IMG/VR virus record: IMGVR_UViG_3300033153_013547
Span: 197,125-261,124 of that record
Strand: one strand, 5' to 3'
DNA length: 64,000 nucleotides
In this document: positions 17,237-63,595 of the stretch, one piece after another
Numbering within the stretch: position 1 is the stretch's first letter
Layout of the letters: each line of letters starts with the position of its first letter
Made by a program: the position numbers and the translations under genes
The notes under the pieces: generated by a model
Databases searched by the model: none
What the model saw: only the letters and a program-made list of their open reading frames with translations
What the model was told of the DNA's origin: nothing

Positions 17237-17758
17237 TTATTTCTTCAAGTTTCTATCCAAATCCAGCATACGAATTATGATTTGCTGGGGATTGATATCA
17301 GATCCTTTGCTACGATTGAACGATTTATCAACCATCATCATATTTGACACGGTTGTTTGACCGCCTTTTGAATATGGTATCACATGATCTGCATCCATAT
17401 TGCTCAATGCCTTATCAAGATTATAGTATGTTTTGTCTGTCATAGGACATTGCATGCCTTGTTTGGCAGCAACTTCTGCACGTATTTTATCACTAAAAAT
17501 ACGCTTACTTCCACCAGCAAATCGTCCATTATAAATGAATCCTGCTATATTGATCACATTTGCCACACAATATGTTGCAAGCAATAGACCAATAGTCATT
17601 CCCAAGATGTTTTTGTTAGCATTTTCTATAACTATGTAACCATCTTTGTAATAGTTTTGCACAAGAAACTTTGCATTTTCGTATGATAATCTGCCATCAC
17701 GAACTAATTGTCTGATGTCTTGATAGTCTATACGATAGCCCGTGTCCTTCTGTTTCAT
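17237..17758 (-). CDS. HNH endonuclease with a central hydrophobic segment
   Basis: CPMT...MDADHVIPYSKGGQTTVSNMMMVDKSFNRSKG. Confidence 0.75.
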   Translation of the reverse strand: MKQKDTGYRIDYQDIRQLVRDGRLSYENAKFLVQNYYKDGYIVIENANKNILGMTIGLLLATYCVANVINIAGFIYNGRFAGGSKRIFSDKIRAEVAAKQGMQCPMTDKTYYNLDKALSNMDADHVIPYSKGGQTTVSNMMMVDKSFNRSKGSDINPQQIIIRMLDLDRNLKK

Positions 17759-17774
17759 TTACTTTTACCTCAAG

Positions 17775-18218
17775 TTAATCAGATACAGAAACCGAATAAT
17801 AATGTTCTCCAGTTTCTCTATTTATCCAGCTCCATGTACAGGTTATCAAATAACCTTCATCGTCCAATCGTCCTTCCCAAATCTCGTCAGCATGACCATA
17901 TGGAGAAACTTTTTTGAAACCACAAACATGCATTCTATTCAAAAATGTTTGATAATCACCCTTCATGTGATTACCAAAACCTATTTTGATGACTTGTATA
18001 TCTTGTGTGTGATCATCAGTTATATGATTGTCGATTGTCTCTTTAGCGGGTGCTATAATATCTGTTTTCCCCTTGTCAATGGTTTCTTCTGATATAAAGG
18101 ACGACATTGATAAACTCTGTAAAATCATTCCAACAAACAATGAAATGATAATACATACGATAAGGGCTCCGGCAGGTACACCCTGCCCCTTTGGCTTGTT
18201 ACTATATTTGTTGGTCAT
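17775..18218 (-). CDS. N-terminally anchored membrane protein
   Basis: ALIVCIIISLFVGMIL TM helix. Confidence 0.55.
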   Translation of the reverse strand: MTNKYSNKPKGQGVPAGALIVCIIISLFVGMILQSLSMSSFISEETIDKGKTDIIAPAKETIDNHITDDHTQDIQVIKIGFGNHMKGDYQTFLNRMHVCGFKKVSPYGHADEIWEGRLDDEGYLITCTWSWINRETGEHYYSVSVSD

Positions 18219-18233
18219 TAGCCACTCTCCCGA

Positions 18234-19316
18234 TTACTTCCCAGATTTAGCTCTATTACATGCCTTACATAACATTTGACAATTTTCAGGAATTGTCTTT
18301 CCACCCTTATGCCATGGGGTTATGTGATCTGCTTGCATTTCATCTATCTCAAAATGCTTTTCACATTTTACACAAATGCCCTTCTGCCTTTCATATGCTT
18401 CCCTCTTCTGTCCTTCTGTAAATGCTCTAATATTTAGGTATTTTTCTTCTCTTGTCAAAACATATGAAAAAATACCAGACTTCTTGGTCACATCCTCATC
18501 TTGCATCAATTCAAATATTTCCTTATCCAACTTAACGGGGTCTATTTGTTTGTCTTTGAATTTATTGTATAAAAGTCCAAGTGGAACTTTCTTTATTTCC
18601 CTACGATAGGTAAGAAAAGTAGTTCTTGTCCAATTTATAACACGTTGGAAATATGTCCATAGATCAAGGGCGTCTGAATTATGCTGATTACGAGCCATAT
18701 AATCTTCAATATTTTTATCACTGATCCACTCAATTGCAGTTTCTAAATAATCTTGACGAATTGGAGAACCAGGCACATAATCATGAGCCAAATCATAAGC
18801 AGGACAACCAGTCTTACTGAAATATCTTTTTGCATCAGTCAACCAAGGACCAGTGTAAATAGCATTACGAAGTTCTTGATCTGTCAACTTCTCACCAGCT
18901 ATATTGATGGTTTTAAACCAGTCTAACTTTTCCTTGTCATTTCCTTCACAAAAATAAATCATCAACTTATAGTCAAGAATCTGCTCTTTCTCTGTGTCCT
19001 CAAGATTGTGAAAATACTGATAATCCAGTGAGAAATTGCCTGCTACATATTCACAAATGCTTATGGTTCTTTGCTGTCCATCCATAACTTCATAGGAACC
19101 ATCTGTGTTCTTGACCCAATACATTACATTTAGGGGAAAATCCTTTCTTACTGTTTCAATTACAGCTGCCCTTTGCTTGTCTTTGTAAATAAATTCTCGT
19201 TGATATTTTGGACGAATGTTGAGCTTTCCACCATAACCAATAACACCTTCTTCGTTGTTATTGATGTATTCATTTACTACTTCTCTGATAGTAATTTCTT
19301 TAAGTTCTATTTTCAT
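18234..19316 (-). CDS. DUF262 (GmrSD-like) + HNH endonuclease
   Basis: PKYQREFIY, EVMDGQQRT, FKTINIAGEKLT (DUF262); C-terminal CVKC...ADHITPWHKGGKT...NCQMLCKACN. Confidence 0.9.
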   Translation of the reverse strand: MKIELKEITIREVVNEYINNNEEGVIGYGGKLNIRPKYQREFIYKDKQRAAVIETVRKDFPLNVMYWVKNTDGSYEVMDGQQRTISICEYVAGNFSLDYQYFHNLEDTEKEQILDYKLMIYFCEGNDKEKLDWFKTINIAGEKLTDQELRNAIYTGPWLTDAKRYFSKTGCPAYDLAHDYVPGSPIRQDYLETAIEWISDKNIEDYMARNQHNSDALDLWTYFQRVINWTRTTFLTYRREIKKVPLGLLYNKFKDKQIDPVKLDKEIFELMQDEDVTKKSGIFSYVLTREEKYLNIRAFTEGQKREAYERQKGICVKCEKHFEIDEMQADHITPWHKGGKTIPENCQMLCKACNRAKSGK

Positions 19317-19332
19317 TTATTTATCCTGATAT

Positions 19333-19617
19333 TTATAAAATAACAACTGCATCAAGATGACCTGGTTCAAAATCTTCAAATGTAACAAAGAAATATTCGT
19401 CTTGACCATTATCAGGAGGAGATCTATTAATGATTAGGTAAGTTAGATATCCTGGTCTATATATTGCATACCATTCTTCGTTTTCGTTTCTATCTTTCTG
19501 TGATATTCTTTGTAATGATTTTTTAAACTCAGATTTTAATCTATGTTGTGCATCAATAAATGAATCAATCCCCTTCAGTAATTTTTCTAATTCACTTTTA
19601 TGTTTGGCCTGTGTCAT
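19333..19617 (-). CDS. hypothetical protein between MTase and nuclease
   Basis: ORF overlapping the MTase stop. Confidence 0.55.
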   Translation of the reverse strand: MTQAKHKSELEKLLKGIDSFIDAQHRLKSEFKKSLQRISQKDRNENEEWYAIYRPGYLTYLIINRSPPDNGQDEYFFVTFEDFEPGHLDAVVIL

Positions 19618-20555
19618 TTCATTCTCCTGTTTTTTATGAAAATTCTACTATACATTCTTTTGCCATTTATATACCCACGCCCTTTGGAAATTTCTAAATC
19701 ATACTCATTTCCCAATATTTCAAACTGCTCAGGATTGTATTTACTTAAAAATGTAATAGGCACACCCATAACACCATCATAATCCATGGGTATATTTTTC
19801 ACTTTATTAACCTCGATAGCATCGTAGTTATCATATTTTGGGTAGACCTCTTCATTTTTATAGTATTTCTTATACAAAATCAAATCTTCATGTCTTTTGG
19901 GATAGTCTAAATTGGTGAACCAACTTATAGCAGGAACCTTCCCATATTTCTTGCCAGTTTTTTCATCAATTCTATTCCATCTTTCATAATCATCAGATAG
20001 TCCAAATTCCATTACTATATTGGAGCTATTGCCCAACCAAATCTTATTTTCCTTGATCAACTTGAAAATTTCTTTGTAAGTAATAGCATTTTGATTACCA
20101 ATTATTATAAATTTCTTGTCATATTCTATCAATTGATCAACATATTCCCTAAACAATGAAAAGGGTGGATTGGTGACTACAACATCTGCTTCCTTCAATA
20201 TCTCTATACATTCAGGACTTCTAAAATCACCATTTTGCTTCAAGGGGGTTTTTATGGTGTCCATCTTATTTATCTTGCCATCATCATTGATGTCAGCAAT
20301 AAGTTCCAGTTTATATGACGGCTTATCTGTCTCAAAATGGGTGGCAATTAGTTTTTTTAGCCCCAGATGCTCAAAATTCAAGGCAAAATAATTCCAGAAA
20401 TTACTCTCTTCAGGATCATCACAATTGCAGAATATAATTTTACCTTTTAGGTGATCTTTATAGTGCTTCAATTCCCTTTCTATATCTGCTAATTGCGTAT
20501 AAAATTCATCATTCTTTGCTTTCTTTGCTTGATGTAAATTTTTATTGGCTGCCAT
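19614..20555 (-). CDS. adenine-specific DNA methyltransferase, EcoRI-methylase family
   Basis: KNDEFYT, CNCDDP, NGDFRS.EC, VVTNPPFSLFREY, GVMGVPITFL. Confidence 0.9.
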   Translation of the reverse strand: MAANKNLHQAKKAKNDEFYTQLADIERELKHYKDHLKGKIIFCNCDDPEESNFWNYFALNFEHLGLKKLIATHFETDKPSYKLELIADINDDGKINKMDTIKTPLKQNGDFRSPECIEILKEADVVVTNPPFSLFREYVDQLIEYDKKFIIIGNQNAITYKEIFKLIKENKIWLGNSSNIVMEFGLSDDYERWNRIDEKTGKKYGKVPAISWFTNLDYPKRHEDLILYKKYYKNEEVYPKYDNYDAIEVNKVKNIPMDYDGVMGVPITFLSKYNPEQFEILGNEYDLEISKGRGYINGKRMYSRIFIKNRRMK

Positions 20556-20824
20556 CACTCATCCCTCATCATACTAATATCTTTCAATCTTTCTACTGCC
20601 TTCTCATAATATTCCATACTTTCGACAACATGTTTCCATTGAATATAAACAACATCAAGCTGTCCATGTTCATCAACAAGTTTTTTGGCTGATTCCAGTA
20701 CTGCTTGTTCTGTATTTTCTGCTGGAATATCAATAAATTTTAGAAATGTTGTGTCTAATTTCACAACATACCAGCCATCCTCTTCTCCGTCCATTTCTGT
20801 TATACGATATTTATCTTCGCCCAT
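20555..20824 (-). CDS. hypothetical protein whose C-terminus duplicates the MTase end at 22538-22572
   Basis: YYEKAVERLKD vs YYDKAVERLKD. Confidence 0.55.
   Translation of the reverse strand: MGEDKYRITEMDGEEDGWYVVKLDTTFLKFIDIPAENTEQAVLESAKKLVDEHGQLDVVYIQWKHVVESMEYYEKAVERLKDISMMRDE
20579..20613. repeat. 35-bp direct repeat, copy 1
   Basis: atctttcaatctttctactgccttctcataatatt; 34/35 identical to 22538-22572. Confidence 0.9.
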
Positions 20825-20872
20825 CTAATCACCTCGGTTATCATTCCACTTTGTCCAGGAATTGTCTTTCCA

Positions 20873-21184
20873 CTAAATATAGTATAAGCCAACAATACTT
20901 ACCACAACAGACGTGATAGACACAACGAGCGCCGTGATACTTATTGCACGATTCCTTTGTCCCTCCCAGTATACCATAAAAACCTCTGCAGCGTCCTGAA
21001 GATCTTGCTTCCATTTGTCTATGCCCAGACATTTTTCTATGCCCATATTATCTATATATGGATCAATCCTCCACCACATATCACCAATGGCTTTTATTTC
21101 TTTCAAGGGCATAATTTTGGCATATATTCGTTCGACCCTAGCTTTTTCCTTGCTTCGGTGTATTGACTTGTATTTTTTGCTCAT
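20873..21184 (-). CDS. C-terminally membrane-anchored protein, paralog of 16472-16810
   Basis: Alignment by eye with 16472-16810; C-terminal TM helix. Confidence 0.65.
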   Translation of the reverse strand: MSKKYKSIHRSKEKARVERIYAKIMPLKEIKAIGDMWWRIDPYIDNMGIEKCLGIDKWKQDLQDAAEVFMVYWEGQRNRAISITALVVSITSVVVSIVGLYYI

Positions 21185-21185
21185 T

Positions 21186-21800
21186 TTACTTTCTTAGTAC
21201 GAATTTGTCGATACTTCGCTGATACACTTTCCATCGATCAAATATTTTATCTTGATCTGATATCTCGAAGCGAATTGCGTATTCGTTGTTGGTATTGTTC
21301 TTGCCTGATTCCCTTGTGCCATGAGCATAACCAGCCTTAGTTAGATCAAGCTCTTTATGCATTTCATTATTGGTTAATAGGAAAGTATAACGAACGAACT
21401 CCTCACTTCTTATGTCAAATGCTTCAACAATATAGTCTACTTCCTGCCAAGGTCTGATCTGCACTATGTTTACATTGGAACCATCGTGCATCAGCAGCGA
21501 GCACTTATATTCGAAATGGATACCATTAGCATTTCTACAATCTCCCCTACCATCAGATGCCTTGACTTTCACCAGCCCGTTTTCTCTTATGAATCTATTT
21601 TCTATTCTAGGAGCAAATGCCTGACTACTTAAGAACGACATACCATATATAAAATATTCCCAACTTTCATTGTTTCCCCAGCTCCTATCTTTGCCAATAG
21701 TTGTCTTGATATAGTTCGGTATTTTACTAGCCTCTTTTAATTGTTGCAAAGTTAGCTTGATTTTCTGCAATTCTTTTGACCGCCTTGTCGTAAAACTCAT
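21186..21800 (-). CDS. putative type II restriction endonuclease (PD-(D/E)xK)
   Basis: GRGD...HFEYKCS, NIVQIRPWQEVDY; directly downstream of an MTase. Confidence 0.6.
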   Translation of the reverse strand: MSFTTRRSKELQKIKLTLQQLKEASKIPNYIKTTIGKDRSWGNNESWEYFIYGMSFLSSQAFAPRIENRFIRENGLVKVKASDGRGDCRNANGIHFEYKCSLLMHDGSNVNIVQIRPWQEVDYIVEAFDIRSEEFVRYTFLLTNNEMHKELDLTKAGYAHGTRESGKNNTNNEYAIRFEISDQDKIFDRWKVYQRSIDKFVLRK

Positions 21801-22479
21801 TATTAGATTCTATACCAACGAATTGCCTATTCAAATTAGTAGCGGCTACAGCCGTAGTCCCACTACCAATACAATTATCTAAAACTAAATCATTTTCATT
21901 GGTATATACTTTGATTAAATACTCAAATAACTCAAGTGGTTTTTGGGTAGGATGCCCTCCCTTGATCCTCGGATTACTTATTTTGATCACGGACCTGGCA
22001 TGTCTGAAGCCTTCGTTATTTTTATAGCTTGATTTTTGCTGATTATACATATCACTTTTGTAACCAGCCTTTCGGCTTATGGAATATGGTGTTCCAATCG
22101 TTTTCTGCTCATTATATACTGGTATTTTCGTGTAAAATACCAGTATATTCTCATGCACTCTTAGGGGCTGGTGTTTTATGTTGAGCTGTCCTGATCCTAT
22201 AGTCTTTTCCCATATCAACTCATATTTAAATAACTCAATATTACTTGCTATCAATAATGAAGTAAATGGTTGTGAAGCCGTCAAGACGATGGCCCCGTTG
22301 TTCTTGATAATCCTTTTATATTCTTTCCACAATGGCTCAAAAGGTATGATCACATCCCATTTACAGTTGGTCGTTCCATATGGCAAATCACACAGGATCA
22401 TATCAATAGATCCGTCTTCAATATGTGGCATTATATCCAAACAATCTCCAAGGTAGATATTATTAGGCTCTATTTTCAT
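21727..22479 (-). CDS. beta-class N6A/N4C DNA methyltransferase
   Basis: CDLPYG (motif IV), HPTQKP, VLDNCIGSGTT (motif I). Confidence 0.9.
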   Translation of the reverse strand: MKIEPNNIYLGDCLDIMPHIEDGSIDMILCDLPYGTTNCKWDVIIPFEPLWKEYKRIIKNNGAIVLTASQPFTSLLIASNIELFKYELIWEKTIGSGQLNIKHQPLRVHENILVFYTKIPVYNEQKTIGTPYSISRKAGYKSDMYNQQKSSYKNNEGFRHARSVIKISNPRIKGGHPTQKPLELFEYLIKVYTNENDLVLDNCIGSGTTAVAATNLNRQFVGIESNNEFYDKAVKRIAENQANFATIKRG

Positions 22480-22480
22480 T

Positions 22481-23254
22481 TTACATCAACCCTTCTTCCT
22501 TCTCCTTCACATCATCCATTTCTGCATGCCTTCTTACATCTTTCAATCTTTCTACTGCCTTATCATAATATTGTTTGTCTAATTCACAACCCATAGCATT
22601 TCTACCTTGCTGTATTGCAGCTACAAGCATAGTGGCAGATCCACAAAAAGGATCCAAAACAACATCTCCAGCATTAGAATGTATATCTATAAGCTCATGC
22701 ATCAATTTCAATGGTTTTTGGGTAGGATGTAATCTCTTGCCCCCATCTCTATGTATTGGCTGACTAAAAACACCATTATGATATTTTGCATGAAATGTAG
22801 GTTTTGATCCCTTTGTGGCTACAATAGCAACTTCACGAGCATTTGTCAAATAAGATACCTTAGAATTTATAGGCACAGGAATTGTCTTGATCCATTCAAT
22901 GAAACGAAGCATTTTGAACTTTTTGCTCTTCAGCAGACAAGCCAGGGATTCTAATTTCCATAGATCATAGAACACAATGATAGTGCCCCCTTTTCTTAGC
23001 ACACGATAACATTCTCCAAAAACATTGTCAAATAAACTAGCATGATCTTCTGCAGCAATCTTGTCCCACTTACCAAAATCCATAGATATTCTTAGACGCT
23101 CAACTCCCTTGTCACCCATAGCCTGAAACCCTGTTTTCTTTGATATTTGATAAGGTGGATCAGTAAGCACAAGATCAATAGAATTATCATCTATTTCCTT
23201 GAGAAAGTCCTGGGCATCTCTATTTTCAAAAACAAGATTAGGCTTTATCTCCAT
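22481..23254 (-). CDS. beta-class N6A/N4C DNA methyltransferase
   Basis: TDPPY, HPTQKP, VLDPFCGSAT. Confidence 0.9.
   Translation of the reverse strand: MEIKPNLVFENRDAQDFLKEIDDNSIDLVLTDPPYQISKKTGFQAMGDKGVERLRISMDFGKWDKIAAEDHASLFDNVFGECYRVLRKGGTIIVFYDLWKLESLACLLKSKKFKMLRFIEWIKTIPVPINSKVSYLTNAREVAIVATKGSKPTFHAKYHNGVFSQPIHRDGGKRLHPTQKPLKLMHELIDIHSNAGDVVLDPFCGSATMLVAAIQQGRNAMGCELDKQYYDKAVERLKDVRRHAEMDDVKEKEEGLM
22538..22572. repeat. 35-bp direct repeat, copy 2
   Basis: atctttcaatctttctactgccttatcataatatt. Confidence 0.9.
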
Positions 23255-23902
23255 CTACACCAGTTCCTCTTTCACAACATCTAAAAGATTGTTGTATATT
23301 ATGCCCAATCCATTATGGAATTCTTTATCTAATTTGTTGCCTATATCCAGATAGTTTTTATTACTAACAGAATGTAATCCACTGAAATAATTATAGCCAT
23401 CATTGGGTATTGATGTGGTTATTTGATCGCCACTACTACGAAGGTTGGGTATATCCTCCCTCGATATCACGGCAAACCCTATATCCATTGTTCCCTTGCG
23501 ATTGTTGCCTCTTTGTATAGTCATTAGATAGTCAAACTCTAAATCATGTACATCTGGATCTTGACTATTATTACCCAATTTATTCTTGATCACTATTGAC
23601 TTTGCAGTTGTGAGTCGATTGGGAGATTTTTTGAGCGGTTGTTGAAACATATATGTCTGGATTTTGACAGAGATTCTATCTTTATTATTGTACATTAAAT
23701 CATATCCAACATTGTACGATGATTCCAAAACATTCTTACCAACATAAGGCTTAACAATAGTATAACACAACAAATGACTAATATGAAATCTATAATCGGG
23801 CTTATTCATTTCTGGCGGTATTCCTCTAGACGCCATCTCAATAGATTTTAATATATTGTTATGTTCCAATCGACAAAATCGTATAAAACTGCATCCAAAC
23901 AC
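23255..23902 (-). CDS. putative restriction endonuclease-like protein
   Basis: GYDL...ISVK (PD-(D/E)xK-like), IVIKN, FDYL; coupled to the upstream MTase. Confidence 0.45.
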   Translation of the reverse strand: MFGCSFIRFCRLEHNNILKSIEMASRGIPPEMNKPDYRFHISHLLCYTIVKPYVGKNVLESSYNVGYDLMYNNKDRISVKIQTYMFQQPLKKSPNRLTTAKSIVIKNKLGNNSQDPDVHDLEFDYLMTIQRGNNRKGTMDIGFAVISREDIPNLRSSGDQITTSIPNDGYNYFSGLHSVSNKNYLDIGNKLDKEFHNGLGIIYNNLLDVVKEELV

Positions 23903-24885
23903 TACTTACTTCCTTTACAATACTTGTCTATAATATTTTTGATTGAGAATTTTCCTCTTCCGTATTTCTGTTGCAAGAATAAATTCACTTCGCCCTGTCC
24001 TAAACCTTTGTCTAACAACGATTTATAATCATTACGGATCGAGGCAATTTCTCCTTCTTCTATCTTTTTGCCCTGATTTTTGGGCACAACATTTACCACT
24101 TTTTTCATGTTATCAAGATCACAACCAAATTTTATCTCTCCCAATTTACTAATATGATGATCAAAAATACTCTTATTAATCTCATATCCCACTATCTTTC
24201 TGCCCAATTTGATAGCATTATATGCTGTAGTAAAATTACCCATAAAAAAATCACACACCATATCCCCAGCATTGGATGAATATAAAATCATTTTTCTAAC
24301 CAATTCATTTGGTAGTTTGTTTTGGTTTTTTGGTATTTTGGGATCATATTCTTTATTAATAATAAAGACATCTTCTAGATCCTGATATAACAATGACTTA
24401 CCTGTGGAGGTCTTTTCTTGTGATCCAAATCTACAATAGGTATTGAAAATATTTTTGCTTTTTATGCTTTTGCTATAATATAAAATATGATAATGTGAAG
24501 TTACATATTTCTTTTTTGTATACACACCAAAATTATATTTCCAGATAATATGATTAATCTCATGTAACTTTAGGGCATAAGCTGCATTTAACACATGCCT
24601 CAAATTACTATGTCCCATGATAATATACATTGACCCATTTGGTTTCAATATTCTGGATGCTTCTGTCATCCACTCATGCGTCCATTTCCCGTAATCTGCA
24701 GGGGCTTCGACATAACCATCTATGATATTAGACGAATCTCTTTTATAGTGTTTATCAAATGATATCTCATCAATGCCAAATGGTGGATCATATATCCCTA
24801 AATCAACATGATTATCTGGGATATCTGCTCTGCTGCTCATACAATCAGCATTAAATATCTGAATTTTGGGTTTTCTTTCTCTCAT
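23902..24885 (-). CDS. beta-class DNA methyltransferase with C-terminal extension
   Basis: YDPPF, SSNAGDMVCDFFMGNFTT. Confidence 0.85.
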   Translation of the reverse strand: MRERKPKIQIFNADCMSSRADIPDNHVDLGIYDPPFGIDEISFDKHYKRDSSNIIDGYVEAPADYGKWTHEWMTEASRILKPNGSMYIIMGHSNLRHVLNAAYALKLHEINHIIWKYNFGVYTKKKYVTSHYHILYYSKSIKSKNIFNTYCRFGSQEKTSTGKSLLYQDLEDVFIINKEYDPKIPKNQNKLPNELVRKMILYSSNAGDMVCDFFMGNFTTAYNAIKLGRKIVGYEINKSIFDHHISKLGEIKFGCDLDNMKKVVNVVPKNQGKKIEEGEIASIRNDYKSLLDKGLGQGEVNLFLQQKYGRGKFSIKNIIDKYCKGSK

Positions 24886-39924: not shown

Positions 39925-40176
39925 TTAATGTTGCAATGTAGCAATAACACTCACTATATGATCGAATTTTACATAATAATATCGATCAATAACCGTAGGT
40001 TTGGTGACATCAAACATCGATCCACAGATATCTCTTCTGTCTTTCATTTGATGAACCAATTCTTCTACTTCATGAGAAGATATGTTCTCTAAATCTATTA
40101 CATGTAACTCCCCATGAATTTCCACTTTTATTTCAACATCATAGAAATCATCATCTCTAAAATTCAGTTCTTTCAT
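39925..40176 (-). CDS. hypothetical protein
   Basis: Coupled to DnaE part 3 stop. Confidence 0.55.
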   Translation of the reverse strand: MKELNFRDDDFYDVEIKVEIHGELHVIDLENISSHEVEELVHQMKDRRDICGSMFDVTKPTVIDRYYYVKFDHIVSVIATLQH

Positions 40177-41294
40177 GATGGTTCTTTTACCTCCAACTGT
40201 TCCAACTCAAACACTTTCTTAATTACTATTGTGCCTCTATTACTTACCTTTCCCTCAATACACACAGGATTATTATTAACCAGTAATCCCAGTGAGGCAA
40301 TATCTTTCTCATCATCTTCATCATAAAAATATATGCATGGTAGATGAGTTATCCCGTCAGAAATTTCAAACACAAGGTAAGGGGTTCCTTTTCTGCTAAT
40401 AAATGATCTTCTTGAAGAAACAAGACCAACATACTGCCCCTGAACCTTGCCTATTTGTCTTGATTCCGTAGGATTATGAGCTCCTGCAGGTATATTATAA
40501 GCATCTAAAATGCCACCAGAAATATACACTCCCAAGATCTCAAACTCCATGGAACTTAATTCAGCCTTACTAAACTCCCCTATGATTACAAGTTCATCTA
40601 TATCTAGATCAAGAGGTAATGGCTCACGTGATTCTGCCTTTTTATTCTTTAGCCTTGCTTTATTCTTAGCATTCCATTCATGTATTTTTCTATAAGCATA
40701 TAAGAGAGCTTTACGTGTCAGCACAACATCACTATTATCTAACAGAGGTATACCATCAAACGCACCTATTTTGATTAGATTAATCATTCCATCTTTACGT
40801 GCTGTGCCCCTAACTACAATATCCTGCACAGATTTATATGGTCCATTGTCTTCTCTGTTTTTTACAATGACACTGGCTGAATTTAGCCCCACCTTCCTTA
40901 CAGAAGTCAGCCCAAACATAATATGTCTAACTTTGTCATCGTCTTCATATGGTGTAAACATAGTACCAGAAATGTTGATCCTTGGTGGTGAGAGCTTTAT
41001 TTTCAATTGTTTACACTCCTTCATGAAATCCCTAAGAGTATTCTCAAGATCATCTCCACTTTTAGACTCAATAGCATCAATCATAGATGCAGCAATAAAA
41101 ATATGTGGCCAGTATGTTTTTACATAGGCAGTATGATAGGTCAAGATAGCATAAGATACTGAATGACTGTTCTGACTAACCAAAAATTGTTTAGCCCTTT
41201 CATCTGTTACTAGATAATTGTGAGGAGGACCATCAAGTGAAAGACTTATAAAGGCTTTTTTATTCATACCTTGTTCCCATCCATCTACAGACAA
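40173..41294 (-). CDS. dnaE: DNA polymerase III alpha part 3: C-intein (33-42 aa) + C-terminal fingers/HhH/OB domains
   Basis: ...PPHNYLV...LVSQN|SHSVSYA...AYVKTYWP, FGLTSVRKVG, LIKIGAFD, EFEILGVYISG; start TTG 41294 or ATG 41267. Confidence 0.9.
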   Translation of the reverse strand: MSVDGWEQGMNKKAFISLSLDGPPHNYLVTDERAKQFLVSQNSHSVSYAILTYHTAYVKTYWPHIFIAASMIDAIESKSGDDLENTLRDFMKECKQLKIKLSPPRINISGTMFTPYEDDDKVRHIMFGLTSVRKVGLNSASVIVKNREDNGPYKSVQDIVVRGTARKDGMINLIKIGAFDGIPLLDNSDVVLTRKALLYAYRKIHEWNAKNKARLKNKKAESREPLPLDLDIDELVIIGEFSKAELSSMEFEILGVYISGGILDAYNIPAGAHNPTESRQIGKVQGQYVGLVSSRRSFISRKGTPYLVFEISDGITHLPCIYFYDEDDEKDIASLGLLVNNNPVCIEGKVSNRGTIVIKKVFELEQLEVKEPS

Positions 41295-41748
41295 TTAATC
41301 CAGAATTGATCTTTTCATAATTCACACAAATATCCAAAAACTGATCAACAGTAGCAATAGCACTATCAGTTCCTGCTGTTTTTAGTGCTCTTGCAAATAT
41401 TTGCCTATTTTTATCCTGATCTATTACACCACGAATATTCTCCATTACATTCCACTTTTGAGCCATTTGTCTAATACAAGTCCAGTGAGTCATCAATATA
41501 GGATCCTTGTTGATATTACGTCCATATCCACGAATTGTGGGTAGTTCAGAGGCACCAGCCTGCTTAAATACTTTTGACATACTACGTATTATGCTTGATC
41601 CCTTACAATAAAAATAATCAGTTCCTGGTAACTCATCACGTTTAACTACAATAGCTGTTGTTGATCTCATCCTTGTATCTTTAGGTAATTTGATCAAATA
41701 GTAATTATTACCACATATACTAACTTTGCCAATTATATTGTTATCCAT
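41260..41748 (-). CDS. unknown 162-aa protein between the split-intein halves
   Basis: ATG overlaps the N-intein stop (ATGGATAA); its own stop overlaps the in-frame ATG of the C-intein gene (ATGAATAA). Confidence 0.7.
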   Translation of the reverse strand: MDNNIIGKVSICGNNYYLIKLPKDTRMRSTTAIVVKRDELPGTDYFYCKGSSIIRSMSKVFKQAGASELPTIRGYGRNINKDPILMTHWTCIRQMAQKWNVMENIRGVIDQDKNRQIFARALKTAGTDSAIATVDQFLDICVNYEKINSGLIVCRWMGTRYE

Positions 41749-43417
41749 CAATTAATAGTCCTTTATTATCTATTACAACTAGACAATTACACTCATTTGG
41801 CATTTTATACCCATCTTCATTGAGGAAGTAATGATCTCTTGTGCATTCTATTTCAACATTTTCATTGCCTACTTTAACTATTGGTTCATCAAAAGCAAAA
41901 GTTACTGCTCTCACAGTATTAGTTATTATTCCACCATTGCCCACATAAGAATAAATAGTATCTCCAAAGTTCAACTGATCTATTCTTACAAGACCACTTG
42001 GTGTCAAAACCAAAGTATCTTCACTCAGACACTTATTGAAACCATAATTTCCAAAACCTTCTATCTGTTCCCATAGTTTGGTAGCTTCTTCTAACGTCCA
42101 GCCTGAATGACGGACACAACCATCAATAAATTTTGGCTTAGCCTGAGCAAGCTTAGAGGACAACTTTTTACCAACAATTCTTCTTAGGTTATCCCCCTCA
42201 TTAGGACTAAACCCAGCAATTTTCTGAGCTATTTCTATAATACTTTCTTGGTATATGATAAGACTAGAAGTTTTTTCCAATATAGGTTTCAGATCATCAT
42301 GCAAATATTCTGGCTTTGTCCTTCCATGCCTAAGAGAAAGGTATTTTTCTTCAAATCCTGCTGACATAGGTCCAGGTCTGTGTAGAGCTATAACATCTGA
42401 AATATCTTCTATGCTAGTAGGCATACATTTCTGCATAGTTTTCCTGATCCCCACAGATTTCATTTGAAATAACCCAGCATACAAGCCTTTTTGCATAAAT
42501 TCAAAAACCTTAGGATCATTCATGGGAATATCATCAATAGTCATACTATTTTCAATGTATCCCATGCTATGAGCCATATTCAAAGTGTTTTGTATAACTG
42601 ACAATGTGCCAAGACCTAAAAAATCTATTTTACATAAGCCTGCTAACCCTGCAGACTTCATATCTAGTTGCACAACATTGTTACCACTAGCATCTACATA
42701 CATAGGCACAATTGACTGCAATGGCTCATTAGATATTATGATCCCAGCAGCATGCAATCCAGTCTGTCTATAATTTTGCCTGAGGGAATTAAATATAGCA
42801 ATAAATTCATCTATGTCCTCAAGACAATTTTCACCCAAAGTCTGCTTGCTTACCTCAACAATTTTAGCAACATACTGCCTTAGTTCTTCATGAATAAATA
42901 TTTCATCAGTCCCTATCCAGTCTCCAGTGCTCATATCTACATTAGTAGCAGGCAAATACATTTTAGATATCAAGCCAACAGATGCTTCTTCACTGCTTCC
43001 ACATATACATCTAACTATGTCTCTAAAAGCAGACTTAGGTTTGTATTCTGCATAAGTGCCTATGCTGGCAAAATATTTGTTACCATATTTACTTCTGACA
43101 GCATCTTTCACTCTGTCTCTACCATACTTGTCAAAATCTATGTCAAAATCTGGTTGCTCTCTTTTGACAACAAGACCAAACTCTCCATCAGGTTTTTTGC
43201 TTGTGATCCCAAGAGCATATGCTAACAATGAATTAGTCTTGTTCTTGTTGCCTGCTCCACAATCACAAGCCTTATTGATCATATAAATCATATGATCATC
43301 AACATGATAGAATTCATATAAATCAAGTTCGTTAGAGATCCTGTCCATCTCTTCTTTACTAAACTTTTTCTCCCATCGTTCAGTCTGCTGGTGACAAAAA
43401 TCCCTTAGTTGGCTCAT
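41741..43417 (-). CDS. dnaE: DNA polymerase III alpha part 2: catalytic palm/thumb/fingers + 96-aa N-intein
   Basis: PDFDIDF, HAAGIIIS, KIDFLGL, ALHRPGP, IIYQE, YGFNK|CLSEDTLVLTPSG...IECTRDH. Confidence 0.92.
   Translation of the reverse strand: MSQLRDFCHQQTERWEKKFSKEEMDRISNELDLYEFYHVDDHMIYMINKACDCGAGNKNKTNSLLAYALGITSKKPDGEFGLVVKREQPDFDIDFDKYGRDRVKDAVRSKYGNKYFASIGTYAEYKPKSAFRDIVRCICGSSEEASVGLISKMYLPATNVDMSTGDWIGTDEIFIHEELRQYVAKIVEVSKQTLGENCLEDIDEFIAIFNSLRQNYRQTGLHAAGIIISNEPLQSIVPMYVDASGNNVVQLDMKSAGLAGLCKIDFLGLGTLSVIQNTLNMAHSMGYIENSMTIDDIPMNDPKVFEFMQKGLYAGLFQMKSVGIRKTMQKCMPTSIEDISDVIALHRPGPMSAGFEEKYLSLRHGRTKPEYLHDDLKPILEKTSSLIIYQESIIEIAQKIAGFSPNEGDNLRRIVGKKLSSKLAQAKPKFIDGCVRHSGWTLEEATKLWEQIEGFGNYGFNKCLSEDTLVLTPSGLVRIDQLNFGDTIYSYVGNGGIITNTVRAVTFAFDEPIVKVGNENVEIECTRDHYFLNEDGYKMPNECNCLVVIDNKGLLIDG
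41744..42031 (-). mobile_element. N-terminal half of a naturally split intein
   Basis: Cys1 after FNK; block A CLSEDTLV; block B TxxH (TRDH); ORF ends after 96 aa. Confidence 0.88.
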
Positions 43418-43460
43418 ATCCTCTCCACTATATTTCTTTTGTCTCAGTAGCTTCTTTGTC

Positions 43461-43580
43461 TAATGGTTCTCTCATTCAGTCTGCTTCTTTGTCAAACAAC
43501 TGGGGCATCATGGATTCTAACATATCTGTTACATCATCTAACCTTTCCTTTAGTATATCAATCTTTTCTTCCAGTGCTTC
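43461..43580. repeat. degenerate ~120-bp direct repeat (other copy ~44441-44560)
   Basis: Encodes ILK(E/D)(R/K)L(D/E)D..DMLES.MP.L.DKEAD in both genes. Confidence 0.8.
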
Positions 43581-43793
43581 AAGCTTCTGACTCATGTCTT
43601 CTGTATAGATCACATGGGTTGGAGCAGGAGGATAACCACCATCAGGATAAGGTAAGGGAGTACCAATAAATGAGTCAGGAATTAGTGGATCCTGCTTCCA
43701 TGTATAATCAGTTGTTCCACTATCTGTGATTTCTATCCAATTGTGATCATTGGTGCGGTAAATTCCATGCATACTATTATCATCACTAAACAT
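43476..43793 (-). CDS. hypothetical protein with coiled-coil C-terminus, paralog of 44415-44786
   Basis: Shared C-terminal ~40 aa. Confidence 0.65.
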   Translation of the reverse strand: MFSDDNSMHGIYRTNDHNWIEITDSGTTDYTWKQDPLIPDSFIGTPLPYPDGGYPPAPTHVIYTEDMSQKLEALEEKIDILKERLDDVTDMLESMMPQLFDKEAD

Positions 43794-43801
43794 TTACACT
43801 C

Positions 43802-44440
43802 TCACTTCCTTTGGTAATTGTGCGCCAATAATTGTATATCATCACTATGACGCAAACCTACTTTCTCTAACCTCTCTGCCTCGCGTTTTATTACATACAA
43901 ACACAATGACGGCTTAGCAAGTAACATTCGCTTTGTTGCAGTAAAGGCATAATCATTACAATAACCATAATAACCACCCTTACACAAATTATCTAATTTG
44001 TGGGCATAACGTTTGCCTGCAGAGGTAAGATCTAGTCTATAGGTGAATTTTTCATTCCACTCTAACATTTGAAAGGGAAATTCTGCCACATAATGACTTT
44101 CTATGTATGCCCTATATGGATCAAGTAAATAAGCATGTCGACCTGCATTTATTCTGGTAGTCTTGATCATCCCAAATGCCACTAAATAATTTATTGCTTC
44201 AAATAGTTGCTTACTACATGCACCATACTTTGTCATAATAAAATCATTTTTCAGATTTATTTTATTATGCCTATGTCCTAGTATACCTATACCAGGATGC
44301 ATGTAAAGACACAGATAAGTCATGTCATCAAGACCCAGCACAGGTTTACTATTGTTATAAAACAGTATTCTAACAACATAATCACGTATACCAAGGTCTA
44401 GAGGTTGCCATGTATTACCATTCATGAGCACTATCCTCAT
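43802..44440 (-). CDS. winged-helix protein, possibly DUF4065/SocA (Panacea)-like
   Basis: DFIMTKYGACSKQLFEAINYLVAFGMI...LTSAGKRYA resembles the F...YGP.S..L...L...G.I / LT..G pattern. Confidence 0.35.
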   Translation of the reverse strand: MRIVLMNGNTWQPLDLGIRDYVVRILFYNNSKPVLGLDDMTYLCLYMHPGIGILGHRHNKINLKNDFIMTKYGACSKQLFEAINYLVAFGMIKTTRINAGRHAYLLDPYRAYIESHYVAEFPFQMLEWNEKFTYRLDLTSAGKRYAHKLDNLCKGGYYGYCNDYAFTATKRMLLAKPSLCLYVIKREAERLEKVGLRHSDDIQLLAHNYQRK

Positions 44441-44786
44441 CTAACGATTTTCTCATCCAATCTGCTTCCTTATCAGACAATTTTGGCATCGCAGATTCTA
44501 GCATATCTATTATGTCTTCTAACTTATCTTTTAGTATGCCAATATCTTCTTGCAATTTATCAATCTTTTCTGCCATGGATAGAGGCATAGCATATGATAA
44601 CATGTTGGACATCATTGCCTGTGTATCTATTGCAACATCATTGTTGGGATCATTAAGAACACGTAAATCATCAATATGATAATCACCCTGCACTCTATTT
44701 ACGTCTGCTACCAATCTTGCTCTTGCTGGCTCTGACAACGATGACCAATCAAAAGATTGCAGAATTTCACCATCGTAATATACCAC
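44415..44786 (-). CDS. hypothetical protein with coiled-coil C-terminus, paralog of 43476-43793
   Basis: Shared C-terminal ~40 aa. Confidence 0.65.
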   Translation of the reverse strand: MVYYDGEILQSFDWSSLSEPARARLVADVNRVQGDYHIDDLRVLNDPNNDVAIDTQAMMSNMLSYAMPLSMAEKIDKLQEDIGILKDKLEDIIDMLESAMPKLSDKEADWMRKSLDEDSAHEW

Positions 44787-59965: not shown

Positions 59966-60667
59966 TCATTCCTGTGCCCCTTTTGCTATTTCTAGCGCGG
60001 CCTCAAACTCAATCGCACGTTTACACAGCCAGTGCAAGTTAGGCAGTTTCTTCGCCGGTTTACTATCGATATCGGCAACATAGATAACAGCATAAGCAAC
60101 ACGGGCGGCGGCATAGGCAGCGGCATAGGCAATAGCAGGAACGGCGATATCGGCAGCATAGACAACAGCAGAAGCAACGCGGGCGGCGGCATTGGCAACA
60201 TCGACAGCATCGGCGGCAATGGTGGCATAGATGGCATGGGCACAGACAGCGCGGGCAGCACTTTCACTTCTATCGCTGCCGTTCAACCAAGCGACCGCCC
60301 ATCGCATAAAATCTTTGTGCTTGCAAATAACCCTTGCTAATTCTGTTGCCACATGAATACGTGCTAACAAGGGAAACTCCGGTACTTGTATTTCCCGCCT
60401 GAGCGTAATTGTATGGCAATCGCACTTGCAATATTCCTCACGGCTAATTTCGCCATCAGCCACAAACAAGCGCATAGTTGATTCGTCAAAATCAGTCTGT
60501 GTAGGATTCATTAAAACGGCCTGCAATGGGCTAGTGTAGGCATGATAATGATCGGCACTACACAACCCACGCTTTCCCGACAGCCACGGTACAGGCTTGC
60601 CGAGTTCCCACTGGAACCCGTCATAGGTTTGCATATTTGCATCCGTTAACTTATATACTCGCGTCAT
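59966..60667 (-). CDS. phage protein with Ala-rich helical repeats
   Basis: YKLTD...T...QW..G; AARAV/AAYAAA repeats; tandem DNA repeats at ~60080-60195. Confidence 0.65.
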   Translation of the reverse strand: MTRVYKLTDANMQTYDGFQWELGKPVPWLSGKRGLCSADHYHAYTSPLQAVLMNPTQTDFDESTMRLFVADGEISREEYCKCDCHTITLRREIQVPEFPLLARIHVATELARVICKHKDFMRWAVAWLNGSDRSESAARAVCAHAIYATIAADAVDVANAAARVASAVVYAADIAVPAIAYAAAYAAARVAYAVIYVADIDSKPAKKLPNLHWLCKRAIEFEAALEIAKGAQE

Positions 60668-60747
60668 TTTGTGTCCTCCCTTGCTGTCCCCAGTAAACAA
60701 GCACAATGTCGTCCAGCTTATCCGCCTGCGCTGTTATCTTAACCGTG

Positions 60748-60969
60748 CTACCATCCAACAACGTATGGACGAAACTCGCGGTCTCGGTCACGACGGGCGG
60801 TTCGGGGGAGCGATTCTAAATTAGTCCCTATGGTTTCACCAACCAAAAAACATATCAAACCAAGCAGTAATACTCCATAGAATCCATTCAGCTTTTTACT
60901 AATCCAATCGCGCATCGTTAATGTACCTCTCAAGTAGACTTTCCAGATATACCCGCGTATTAAAGGCAA
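60748..60969 (-). CDS. small membrane protein (true start probably MRDWISKK)
   Basis: One TM helix. Confidence 0.4.
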   Translation of the reverse strand: MPLIRGYIWKVYLRGTLTMRDWISKKLNGFYGVLLLGLICFLVGETIGTNLESLPRTARRDRDREFRPYVVGW

Positions 60970-63502: not shown

Positions 63503-63595
63503 CGTCGACCTCCTTAGGTATACTTAATACCTTATCCGCCCACTCTTTGTCGCTCTCTTTTTTTTCTGCTCGCTCAACTGACTAAAACATCCCTA

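What the first reader, a model, noticed from the sequence alone, without database searches (positions are those of the whole stretch)
17237..24885. Phage-borne restriction-modification island with three MTase-nuclease pairs
Seen: four MTases (EcoRI-family, three beta-class) interleaved with nuclease-like genes. The pairs are 23902-24885 + 23255-23902, 21727-22479 + 21186-21800, and 19614-20555 + 18234-19316; there is also a solitary MTase and an extra HNH. Established: phages commonly carry orphan MTases for protection, while complete RM pairs are typical of host defence islands. Inference: the phage may restrict competing elements or degrade host DNA while protecting its own.
Basis: partly seen in the sequence, partly recalled or inferred. 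Interest (0 to 1): 0.65.

Follow-up and report, generated by a model that had tools for sequence, protein, structure and literature searches.

The report
Jumbo phage carries three restriction-modification cassettes
A complete 261-kb metagenomic jumbo phage carries, in one 7.6-kb gene run, three methyltransferase-plus-nuclease cassettes that recur as pairs in unrelated genomes, so they are most likely real restriction-modification systems; two of the nucleases belong to unnamed families.

Summary
All genes lie on the minus strand at the stated coordinates.

- **Methyltransferases (MTases):** there are four, three beta-class (N6_N4_Mtase) and one EcoRI-family.
- **Pair 1:** R1 (23255-23902) has no Pfam hit. 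It folds confidently (pLDDT 94.5) into a restriction-endonuclease fold closest to ThaI and NaeI.
- **Pair 2:** R3 (21186-21800) has an invariant GD…ExK motif and a predicted symmetric homodimer. Its fold was not confidently modelled.
- **Pair 3:** R4 (18234-19316) is not PD-(D/E)xK. It is DUF262 plus HNH and matches a PADLOC Type II REase model over its full length (7e-142).
- **Linkage:** homologues of each nuclease sit next to a methyltransferase in other genomes. These partners are mostly orthologues of the window's own MTase (47-66% identity).
- **Other genes:** M2 (22481-23254) is a phage-type orphan MTase. The 173-aa HNH protein is unpaired.
- **Host genome:** a complete phage record (direct terminal repeats; portal, tail sheath, replication genes; no tyrosine integrase found).

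Recognition sites, activity, and the proposed role of cutting host or rival DNA are untested. Phage-borne RM is already described for jumbo phages, so this is a new member of a known kind.

The parts
23902..24885 (-). M1: beta-class DNA methyltransferase, 327 aa, DPPF motif, probably N6-adenine.
   Evidence: Pfam N6_N4_Mtase 3.9e-33. PADLOC MTase_II PDLC03296 1.2e-87, near full length. It is 52-66% identical to the MTases adjacent to R1 homologues in L011, L012 and L013. The DPPF and CDFFxGNFT motifs are conserved in those orthologues. Nearest solved relatives are CcrM and M.RsrI.
23255..23902 (-). R1: candidate Type II restriction endonuclease, 215 aa, PD-(D/E)xK fold with a D…SxK variant motif. 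Its start overlaps the M1 stop by 1 nt.
   Evidence: No family hit. 59 homologues found by exhaustive HMMER. D68, S78, K80 and N107 are invariant and position 36 is always acidic. AF2 model pLDDT 94.5, pTM 0.90. VIA-align best matches: 3ndh_B Z 10.6 (162 aligned, rmsd 3.2), NaeI Z 9.8, SwaI Z 8.1, NhoI Z 7.9, DpnI Z 6.8. The 13 best matches are all nucleases of the restriction-endonuclease fold: 12 restriction enzymes and the homing endonuclease I-Ssp6803I. An MTase is adjacent in 5 of the 6 homologue contigs examined.
22481..23254 (-). M2: solitary beta-class methyltransferase, 257 aa, DPPY motif, of a phage orphan type.
   Evidence: Pfam N6_N4_Mtase 3.5e-39. About 52% identical to the methyltransferases of lytic E. 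coli phages such as vB_EcoM_PHB05 (Justusliebigvirus), where no recognisable nuclease is annotated beside it. Only 24-25% identical to M1 and M3.
21727..22479 (-). M3: beta-class methyltransferase, 250 aa, with an unusual but conserved DLPY motif.
   Evidence: Pfam N6_N4_Mtase 4.9e-31. PADLOC PDLC03251 2.9e-86. It is 59-62% identical to the MTases directly upstream of R3 homologues in L015, L018 and L019. CDLPYG and GSGTT are conserved in those orthologues. The nearest solved relative is M.MboIIA.
21186..21800 (-). R3: candidate Type II restriction endonuclease of an unnamed family. 204 aa from the ATG; the database gene call is 194 aa. It overlaps the end of M3 by 44-74 nt.
   Evidence: No family or PDB sequence hit. 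47 homologues. Invariant residues: G86, D87, E97, K99, N111, Q114, I115, R116, Q119, H160, G161, T162, N169, E173, R189, W190, Y193. An MTase is immediately upstream in the window and in every other place seen whole except L001 (a transposase) and L023 (solitary): L015/L016, L018, L019, the P0102 contig, L024, L025, L026 and L027. Its class differs between lineages. Homodimer prediction: ipSAE 0.57 against a best control of 0.00, partner pLDDT at least 81, at least 82% of contacts shared between runs. Protein-language-model neighbours include Bsp6I and PvuII clusters, a lead only. The AF2 model from 2 sequences was poor, pLDDT 42.
20873..21184 (-). 103-aa ORF of unknown function, with a hydrophobic C-terminus by reading.
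   Evidence: ORF list. No Pfam hit.
20555..20824 (-). 89-aa acidic ORF of unknown function. It overlaps the M4 start by 4 nt.
   Evidence: ORF list. No Pfam hit.
19614..20558 (-). M4: EcoRI-family (gamma-class, NPPF motif) adenine methyltransferase, 314 aa.
   Evidence: Pfam EcoRI_methylase 1.1e-126, covering profile positions 1-344 of 345. PADLOC PDLC03297 4.2e-125. It is 47-51% identical to the MTases directly upstream of R4 homologues in phage laban6-1 and scaffold MT835503. It is complete but compact, with internal loop deletions.
19333..19617 (-). 94-aa ORF inserted between M4 and R4, function unknown.
   Evidence: No family hit. It is not a split C-terminus of M4. In the other cassettes checked, M and R overlap directly.
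18234..19316 (-). R4: DUF262 (ParB-like, DGQQR motif) plus HNH nuclease, 360 aa. It belongs to a REBASE-derived Type II REase model family.
   Evidence: Pfam GmrSD_N 2.4e-18 plus HNH 5.7e-13. PADLOC REase_II PDLC03418 7.4e-142, residues 1-360 against profile positions 1-372 of 372. DGQQR, two CxxC pairs and DH…N…N are readable in the translation. Homologues at 47-63% identity occur on 50 plasmid records, most listed beside an 'adenine-specific methyltransferase EcoRI family protein'. An overlapping M-R pair occurs in Flavobacterium phage laban6-1.
17775..18218 (-). 147-aa ORF of unknown function, with an N-terminal hydrophobic segment by reading.
   Evidence: ORF list. No family hit.
17237..17758 (-). 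Unpaired small HNH protein, 173 aa, with a hydrophobic segment before the HNH domain.
   Evidence: Pfam HNH_4 2.9e-05 and HNH 1.6e-04. PHROG HNH endonuclease families. Its HNH domain is 31% identical to that of R4, E 7e-10. No methyltransferase partner.

Best explanation
The 17.2-24.9 kb stretch of this phage genome is a co-directional, tightly packed gene run. It holds three complete Type II-style restriction-modification cassettes, one phage-type orphan methyltransferase and one unpaired HNH protein.

The three cassettes:
1. M1 plus R1. M1 is a beta-class, probably N6-adenine, MTase. R1 has a ThaI/NaeI-like PD-(D/E)xK-fold with a D…SxK active-site variant.
2. M3 plus R3. M3 is a beta-class MTase with a DLPY motif. 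R3 is a homodimeric GD…ExK protein from an unnamed family.
3. M4 plus R4. M4 is an EcoRI-family gamma-class MTase. R4 is a DUF262 plus HNH nuclease.

Shown here:
- The domain and fold assignments for the four MTases, R1 and R4.
- Intact conserved residues in all three nucleases.
- Each M-R pair recurs as an adjacent, co-varying two-gene module in unrelated phages, plasmids, bacteria and archaea.

Inferred:
- Each MTase methylates the phage genome at the site its partner nuclease cuts.
- In an infected cell the nucleases therefore cut unmethylated DNA, meaning the host chromosome and co-infecting phages or plasmids, while the phage's own DNA is protected.
- In each cassette the MTase gene precedes its nuclease gene. 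In the first two the nuclease gene overlaps it; in the third a 94-aa ORF lies between them. This order favours methylase being made first.
For: - **MTase domains.**. The unusual catalytic motifs are conserved in orthologues.
- **R1.** AF2 pLDDT 94.5. The best structural matches are Type II restriction enzymes: 3ndh_B Z 10.6 with 162 residues aligned, NaeI Z 9.8, SwaI Z 8.1. The weak Foldseek hits are also dominated by restriction enzymes. D68, S78, K80 and N107 are invariant and position 36 is always acidic across 44 homologues.
- **R3.** Invariant GD87…E97xK99 plus QIR. Homodimer score 0.57 against a best control of 0.00. That mark was reached by 20 of 30 proteins solved as pairs of one chain and by 1 of 23 solved as single chains. 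The runs share at least 82% of contacts and partner pLDDT is at least 81.
- **R4.** Full-length match to PADLOC REase_II PDLC03418, 7.4e-142.
- **Co-inheritance.** Partner MTases are 52-66% identical to M1, 59-62% to M3 and 47-51% to M4, whereas M1, M2 and M3 are only 24-25% identical to one another and M4 shows no BLASTP match to them.
- **Synteny.**. The R3 family is also found directly downstream of a different MTase class in three bacterial genomes, the partner swapping typical of RM.
- **Phage identity and completeness.**
- **Composition.** The island matches its flanks.
- **Precedent.** Jumbo phages are reported to deploy their own R-M systems against rivals (PMC7824862).
Against: - No recognition site, methylation or cleavage was measured.
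- R3 has no confident fold. The AF2 model from two sequences reached pLDDT 42, and there was no Pfam or PDB sequence match.
- R1 carries Ser where the canonical motif has Asp or Glu.
- DUF262 domains are best known as sensors of modified DNA in Type IV-like systems such as GmrSD, BrxU and SspE. R4 may therefore not be an orthodox Type II enzyme.
- I could not identify which characterised enzyme underlies the PADLOC model.
- A 94-aa ORF separates M4 from R4, unlike in the other cassettes checked.
- Two R3 homologues lack an adjacent MTase (L001 and L023).
- No controller protein was found.
- No expression data: no sequencing run was listed.
Confidence: 0.78

Rival explanations
1. The cassettes are selfish addiction modules that merely ride in the phage genome. 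They are real RM pairs, but they persist through horizontal mobility and post-segregational killing rather than because they help the phage attack host or rival DNA.
For: Each cassette is found in very different genomes: plasmids of many phyla, archaeal and bacterial MAGs, and other phage-like contigs. Transposases lie beside some R3 cassettes. In L012 a comparable stack of MTases and nucleases sits between YqeY and Rad52, where L013 has only one pair. That pattern suggests a cargo hot spot.
Against: The island's GC content and skew match the rest of the phage, so it is not a recent arrival. The genes are intact, with every family-invariant residue kept. Keeping three cassettes plus extra MTases in a virus suggests selection. 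This rival also differs from the main explanation only in who benefits.
Confidence: 0.3
2. Pair 3 is not an orthodox Type II system. R4's DUF262 domain senses a DNA modification, as in GmrSD, BrxU or SspE. R4 would then be either a modification-dependent nuclease aimed at rival phages or a nuclease regulated by the M4 mark, rather than an enzyme simply blocked by methylation at its cut site.
For: DUF262 is described as a sensor of modified DNA in several defence systems. R4 also gives weaker PADLOC hits to NsnA (1.1e-27) and PD-T4-2_A (1.8e-12). The ParB-like DGQQR motif is present.
Against: The best PADLOC match by a wide margin is a full-length Type II REase model at 7.4e-142. The nuclease domain is a classical HNH (PF01844), not the DUF1524 of GmrSD. 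The tight, widespread pairing with an EcoRI-family MTase would be self-destructive if R4 cut M4-methylated DNA.
Confidence: 0.15
3. The methyltransferases are only protective orphans against host restriction. The neighbouring ORFs would be unrelated phage nucleases such as homing endonucleases or recombination and repair nucleases, or non-enzymatic proteins.
For: Phages commonly carry orphan MTases. M2 and the fifth MTase at the contig junction look like orphans. The unpaired 173-aa HNH is typical of free-standing phage HNH genes. R1 and R3 have no annotated family.
Against: Homologues of R1, R3 and R4 are almost always adjacent to an MTase, usually the orthologue of the window's partner. This holds in non-phage genomes too. 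R1's nearest folds are almost all Type II restriction enzymes; resolvases appear only lower in the list and a single homing endonuclease at rank 9.
Confidence: 0.07
4. The island is host or other foreign DNA joined to the phage contig by misassembly.
For: The genome is a metagenome assembly, and read support could not be checked because no sequencing run was listed.
Against: GC content and GC skew are continuous with both flanks. All genes are co-directional with the flanking phage genes, with minimal gaps. The contig closes on itself with a 114-bp identical overlap and is rated complete. R1 relatives occur mainly on phage-like contigs.
Confidence: 0.03

Closest known systems
Orthodox Type II restriction-modification systems with PD-(D/E)xK enzymes of the EcoRV-like branch (ThaI, NaeI, SwaI, DpnI, PvuII)
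   Same: - A separate small nuclease gene sits next to a separate MTase gene.
- R1's model superposes on ThaI (3ndh) over 162 residues at Z 10.6, and on NaeI, SwaI, NhoI and DpnI.
- R3 is predicted to be a symmetric homodimer through its N-terminal helices.
   Different: - There is no detectable sequence similarity to any named REase family.
- R1 has D…SxK instead of D…(D/E)xK, with a conserved acidic residue at position 36.
- The partners are beta-class MTases whose recognition sites are unknown.
- The systems sit in a virus genome.
EcoRI restriction-modification system
   Same: M4 is a clear member of the EcoRI methylase family: PF13651, 1.1e-126, NPPF motif.
   Different: The partner nuclease is DUF262 plus HNH, not an EcoRI-type PD-(D/E)xK enzyme. 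M4 is shorter, with loop deletions. Specificity need not be GAATTC.
GmrSD / BrxU / SspE (DUF262-containing Type IV-like nucleases)
   Same: An N-terminal DUF262 ParB-like domain with the DGQQR motif, followed by a His-Me finger nuclease.
   Different: - The C-terminal domain is classical HNH with zinc-binding cysteine pairs, not DUF1524.
- The gene is consistently paired with an adenine MTase.
- The best model match is a Type II REase family.
Virus-encoded RM systems (chlorovirus R.Cvi/M.Cvi pairs, phage P1 EcoP1I, RM systems noted in jumbo phages)
   Same: These are viral genomes with complete M plus R pairs, thought to degrade host DNA or exclude rivals while the viral DNA is methylated. The chlorovirus and P1 examples are from my own knowledge; the jumbo-phage statement is from PMC7824862.
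   Different: Here three unrelated Type II cassettes plus two further MTases are combined in one bacteriophage-type genome. None is close in sequence to a characterised viral enzyme.

Membership tests
Type II restriction-modification system (each of the three pairs) | Adjacent, separately encoded DNA methyltransferase and endonuclease genes. | tested here: met
   M1/R1 overlap by 1 nt. M3/R3 overlap by 44-74 nt. M4 and R4 are separated by a 94-aa ORF.
Type II restriction-modification system (each of the three pairs) | The methyltransferase has SAM-binding and catalytic (D/N/S)PP(Y/F)-type motifs. | tested here: met
   Pfam and PADLOC hits. Motifs read: DPPF (M1), DLPY (M3, conserved in orthologues) and NPPF (M4).
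Type II restriction-modification system (each of the three pairs) | The endonuclease has a nuclease fold with intact catalytic residues. | tested here: inconclusive
   R1 met: fold Z 10.6 to a Type II REase, with invariant D68, S78 and K80. R4 met: HNH domain with the DH…N…N motif. R3: only an invariant GD…ExK motif and a dimer prediction, with no confident fold.
Type II restriction-modification system (each of the three pairs) | M and R are co-inherited as a module across genomes. | tested here: met
   Partner MTases are orthologous to the window's MTases at 47-66% identity. Synteny is shown.
Type II restriction-modification system (each of the three pairs) | R cleaves at a defined sequence, and cleavage is blocked by methylation from the cognate M. 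| not testable with these tools
   This needs enzymology and a methylome.
PD-(D/E)xK restriction endonuclease superfamily (R1) | An alpha-beta-beta-beta-alpha-beta core with D at the start of strand 2 and (D/E)xK in strand 3. | tested here: inconclusive
   The fold is met. D68 precedes a strand and S78-x-K80 lies in the next strand. Ser replaces the acidic residue, and an invariantly acidic position 36 may supply it. Residue-level superposition on ThaI was not available.
PADLOC REase_II model PDLC03418 (R4) | A full-length match to the family profile. | tested here: met
   7.4e-142, 470.9 bits, residues 1-360 against profile positions 1-372 of 372. The characterised enzyme behind the model was not identified.
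GmrSD-type Type IV restriction enzymes (R4) | DUF262 fused to a DUF1524 nuclease, acting alone on modified DNA. | tested here: not met
   The C-terminal domain is HNH PF01844 or HNH_5, and no DUF1524 hit was found. The gene is consistently paired with an MTase.
EcoRI RM system (pair 3) | An EcoRI-family methylase together with an EcoRI-type endonuclease. | tested here: not met
   The methylase is met. The nuclease is DUF262 plus HNH, with no EcoRI-type hit.
Phage orphan methyltransferase (M2) | An MTase whose relatives occur in phages without a cognate nuclease. | tested here: met
   Orthologues at 52% identity occur in lytic E. coli phages next to only a 143-aa hypothetical protein. Neither adjacent nuclease family pairs with M2-type MTases elsewhere.

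The most novel reading that the evidence does not exclude
R1 and R3 found two previously unnamed Type II restriction endonuclease families, and R1's family is mainly phage-borne. A probably lytic jumbo phage stacks three RM systems plus extra methyltransferases as an offensive battery. The battery would destroy host and competitor DNA while the phage's own genome carries at least five methylation marks.
Probability: 0.35. Interest if true: 0.62.

Novelty: new member of a known kind. Interest (0 to 1): 0.5.

Why it matters
- **New enzymes.** If the two unnamed nucleases are active, they add two restriction-enzyme families (about 50-60 known relatives each) whose recognition sites may be new. 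That is useful for enzyme discovery and for annotating many 'hypothetical' genes beside methyltransferases.
- **Phage biology.** Three complete RM cassettes in one phage that shows no tyrosine integrase is a clear case for asking whether phages use restriction offensively, against host DNA or rival phages, rather than only evading it.
- **A practical method.** MTase-anchored synteny combined with co-variation recovers restriction enzymes that profile libraries miss.

Tried and rejected
- **DNA and protein searches in the phage collection.** Megablast of the island found nothing. tblastn of R1, R3 and M1 found nothing.
- **Sequence searches of R1 and R3 against solved structures.** Only noise. 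The A3 profile against PDB gave nothing significant.
- **Pfam scan of all 44 R3-family members.** The only recurring hit was a spurious short Ribosomal_L23 match.
- **AF2 model of R3.** It was built from a two-sequence alignment and reached pLDDT 42. I did not use it for fold searches.
- **Profile-profile comparison of the R3 and R1 families.** No relation.
- **Looking for related phages, to see whether the island is an insertion.**
  - Flanking proteins found no relatives in the viral contigs.
  - The 1564-aa protein found one partial match of no use.
  - The two-sequence R3 alignment (A1) found none.
  - A2 was too divergent to give a search pattern.
  - A4 found none.
- **Read support and expression.** No sequencing run was listed for the island.
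- **Promoter and terminator scans.** Not above shuffled expectation.
- **Is the 94-aa ORF a split-off C-terminus of M4?** Rejected.
- **Source names for R1 and R3 homologues.** Only 'hypothetical protein'.
- **Which characterised enzyme underlies PADLOC model PDLC03418?** Literature searches did not reveal it.
- **Temperate lifestyle.** No tyrosine integrase was found. Serine recombinases were not searched.

Full report
**Setting**

The window is the last 64 kb of a single 261,124-bp contig. The contig's two ends share an identical 114-bp overlap. It is an IMG/VR virus record classed as having direct terminal repeats, with a CheckV completeness of 100%.

It is a tailed phage of jumbo size:
- A portal, a tail sheath and a ribonucleotide reductase lie outside the window.
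- DnaB-like and Dda-like helicases, a UvsX-like recombinase and a DnaE-like polymerase lie inside it.
- The portal is 25-27% identical to those of Bacillus phage 0305phi8-36-like jumbo phages and of Moorella phage MTATph1. This suggests a host among the Bacillota, but only as an inference.
- No tyrosine integrase, C5 methylase or D12-class Dam methylase was found.

**Observation check**

Four are DNA methyltransferases:

| Gene | Coordinates | Pfam hit | E-value |
|---|---|---|---|
| M1 | 23902-24885 | N6_N4_Mtase | 3.9e-33 |
| M2 | 22481-23254 | N6_N4_Mtase | 3.5e-39 |
| M3 | 21727-22479 | N6_N4_Mtase | 4.9e-31 |
| M4 | 19614-20558 | EcoRI_methylase | 1.1e-126 |

The other genes:
- R4 (18234-19316) carries DUF262/GmrSD_N and HNH domains.
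- The 173-aa ORF at 17237-17758 has a weak HNH hit.
- R1 (23255-23902) and R3 (21186-21800) matched nothing in Pfam, PHROGs, NCBIfam or PADLOC.

From 24885 down to 21186 the genes M1-R1-M2-M3-R3 abut or overlap: a 1-nt overlap, a 0-nt gap, a 1-nt gap, then a 44-74-nt overlap. GC content (0.34-0.36) and negative GC skew are continuous with both flanks, so nothing suggests a chimeric join.

**Pair 1 (M1 and R1)**

An exhaustive HMMER search found 59 relatives of R1. In an alignment of 44 of them:
- D68, S78, K80 and N107 are invariant.
- Position 36 is always acidic.

With that alignment AlphaFold2 gave pLDDT 94.5 and pTM 0.90. VIA-align against 48,161 PDB representatives gave these best matches:

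| Match | Z | Note |
|---|---|---|
| 3ndh_B | 10.6 | 162 of 215 residues aligned, rmsd 3.2; titled 'Restriction endonuclease in complex with substrate DNA' |
| NaeI | 9.8 | |
| SwaI | 8.1 | |
| NhoI | 7.9 | |
| DpnI | 6.8 | |

From memory, 3ndh is ThaI. NlaIV, SfiI, MspI, EcoRV, PvuII, BcnI and BglI follow. The 13 best matches are all nucleases of the restriction-endonuclease fold: 12 restriction enzymes and one homing endonuclease (I-Ssp6803I). Foldseek hits were weak (best E 3.8e-3) but likewise dominated by restriction enzymes.

D68 precedes one strand and S78-x-K80 lies in the next. That is the position of the PD…(D/E)xK motif, with Ser replacing the acid. From general knowledge, Cfr10I and NgoMIV use such an SxK variant.

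Context supports the pairing. Five of the six homologue contigs examined have an adjacent N6_N4 MTase. In the sixth, the upstream gene is cut by the contig end. Those MTases are 52-66% identical to M1, whereas M1 is only 24% identical to M2 and M3. The gene order (M then R, or R then M) varies between contigs, as in mobile RM cassettes. The contigs look phage-like (Rad52, YqeY, GIY-YIG, a Holliday-junction resolvase). The nearest ESM Atlas structural clusters are unannotated viral proteins.

**Pair 2 (M3 and R3)**

A single-sequence search found one relative. A profile search then found 47. Across 44 of them the invariant residues are G86, D87, E97, K99, N111, Q114, I115, R116, Q119, H160, G161, T162, N169, E173, R189, W190 and Y193. 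This amounts to a GD-x9-ExK motif.

What failed:
- No Pfam or PDB sequence similarity was found.
- The only structure job left was run on two sequences and failed, with pLDDT 42.

What supports a nuclease:
- A homodimer prediction using the 44-row alignment passed. The score was 0.57 against a best control of 0.00.
- That mark was reached by 20 of 30 proteins solved as pairs of one chain and by 1 of 23 solved as single chains. Because my own alignment was used, these calibration counts hold only roughly.
- The three runs share at least 82% of contacts, and partner pLDDT is at least 81.
- The symmetric interface uses residues 16-59.
- Protein-language-model neighbours include Bsp6I and PvuII clusters. 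This is a lead only.

Context is again the strongest evidence:
- An N6_N4 MTase lies immediately upstream on the same strand in L015/L016, L018, L019 and the P0102 contig.
- A Woesearchaeota MAG (L024) shows the same arrangement.
- The MTases in L015, L018 and L019 are 59-62% identical to M3.
- They share M3's unusual CDLPYG motif.
- In two Poribacteria genomes and an Arenicellales genome the upstream gene, overlapping the R3 homologue in two of them, is a different MTase of 276-286 aa. It has an NPPF motif and matches PADLOC MTase_II PDLC03255 at about 1e-32.
- In L025 the cassette sits beside an MjaI RM system.
- Two homologues lack an MTase neighbour: L001 beside a transposase, and L023.

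A nuclease-sized protein that keeps an MTase neighbour while the MTase class changes is best explained as a restriction endonuclease.

**Pair 3 (M4 and R4)**

R4 matches PADLOC REase_II model PDLC03418 over its whole length at 7.4e-142. Hits to NsnA and PD-T4-2_A are much weaker. The translation shows DGQQR (the ParB-like DUF262 signature), two CxxC pairs and a DH…N…N HNH motif.

Homologues:
- Relatives at 47-63% identity occur on 50 plasmid records from Bacillota, Bacteroidota, Pseudomonadota and Actinomycetota. Most are annotated beside an 'adenine-specific methyltransferase EcoRI family protein'.
- Flavobacterium phage laban6-1 has the overlapping MTase-DUF262 pair.
- A human-faecal phage scaffold has the same arrangement.
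- Those MTases are 47-51% identical to M4.

M4 is complete but compact. The 94-aa ORF between M4 and R4 is not a detached piece of M4.

DUF262 is known mainly from modification-sensing nucleases. R4 may therefore differ mechanistically from textbook Type II enzymes. However, it lacks DUF1524 and is consistently tied to an MTase.

**Remaining genes**

- M2 is about 52% identical to the methyltransferases of lytic E. coli phages, which have no recognisable nuclease beside them. I read it as a phage orphan MTase.
- The 173-aa HNH protein has no MTase partner. Its HNH domain is 31% identical to that of R4.
- A fifth beta-class MTase spans the artificial contig junction. Nothing nuclease-like is detectable beside it.

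**Mechanism**

Shown:
- Three co-inherited M-R modules with intact conserved residues.
- All sit in one tightly packed, co-directional gene run inside the phage's replication-gene arm.

Inferred:
- Each MTase marks phage DNA at its partner's site.
- The nucleases then cut unmarked DNA in the infected cell, either host DNA or competitor DNA.
- Precedents are virus-encoded RM in chloroviruses and phage P1 (my own knowledge) and the statement that jumbo phages deploy their own R-M systems against rivals (PMC7824862).

An alternative is that the cassettes persist as selfish modules. The two readings are not mutually exclusive.

**Novelty and score**

Phage-borne RM is known. All three nucleases fall into known mechanistic classes, though R3's assignment rests on a motif and a dimer prediction rather than a fold. 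This is therefore a new member of a known kind.

What is noteworthy:
- Three unrelated cassettes plus two further MTases in one complete jumbo phage.
- Two nuclease families with no name in any library searched.

Interest is 0.5.

Noticed in passing
window 40173-46018 (minus strand): The DnaE-like DNA polymerase (phrog_405) is encoded in three consecutive ORFs: 44786-46018 (profile positions 42-440), 41741-43417 (433-793) and 40173-41294 (794-1042). They are separated by ORFs with no Pfam hit (43476-44786 and 41260-41751). This may reflect introns, mobile insertions or a naturally split polymerase.
   Followed up: partly
window 63596-64000 continuing into genome 1-579 (L005): A fifth beta-class N6_N4 methyltransferase spans the artificial contig junction. 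No nuclease-like neighbour was detected, so it looks like another orphan MTase.
   Followed up: partly
window 60000-64000, and genome about 70-80 kb: Two segments have 46-48% GC against a background of about 36%. The one in the window holds three tandem YopX paralogues (62009-63330), a DUF5662 protein and a DUF7666 protein.
   Followed up: no
whole genome (G000): Several 4-bp palindromes are strongly under-represented against a Markov expectation: TTAA 0.40, CTAG 0.43, GTAC 0.48, GGCC 0.57, AGCT 0.62, TGCA 0.69. GATC (1.21) and CGCG (2.2) are over-represented and AATT is neutral at 0.96. This may reflect avoidance of host restriction at sites the phage's MTases do not cover.
   Followed up: no
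L012:1345-5905 and L013:1782-6701: In L012 the stretch between YqeY and Rad52 holds a similar stack: N6_N4 MTase, R1 homologue, M1 orthologue, unknown ORF, D12 MTase, PDDEXK_11 protein. In L013 the same YqeY-to-Rad52 stretch holds only the R1 homologue and M1 orthologue as RM genes, beside a few unrelated ones. This looks like a cargo hot spot for RM genes in a phage lineage.
   Followed up: no
L025:205-3381: In a Candidatus Poribacteria MAG, the R3-family cassette (NPPF-type MTase plus R3 homologue) lies directly after an MjaI-type RM pair (N6_N4 MTase plus RE_MjaI, 7.3e-63). Together they form a small RM island.
   Followed up: partly
window 17237-17758 and 17775-18218: Both small proteins downstream of R4 contain a long hydrophobic segment by reading. 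The 173-aa protein would be an HNH nuclease domain attached to a possible membrane anchor, which is unusual for phage HNH proteins.
   Followed up: no
genome 36755-36826 and 49139-49222: ARAGORN found only two tRNA genes in the whole 261-kb genome, tRNA-Thr(tgt) and tRNA-Leu(taa). None lies in the window.
   Followed up: no
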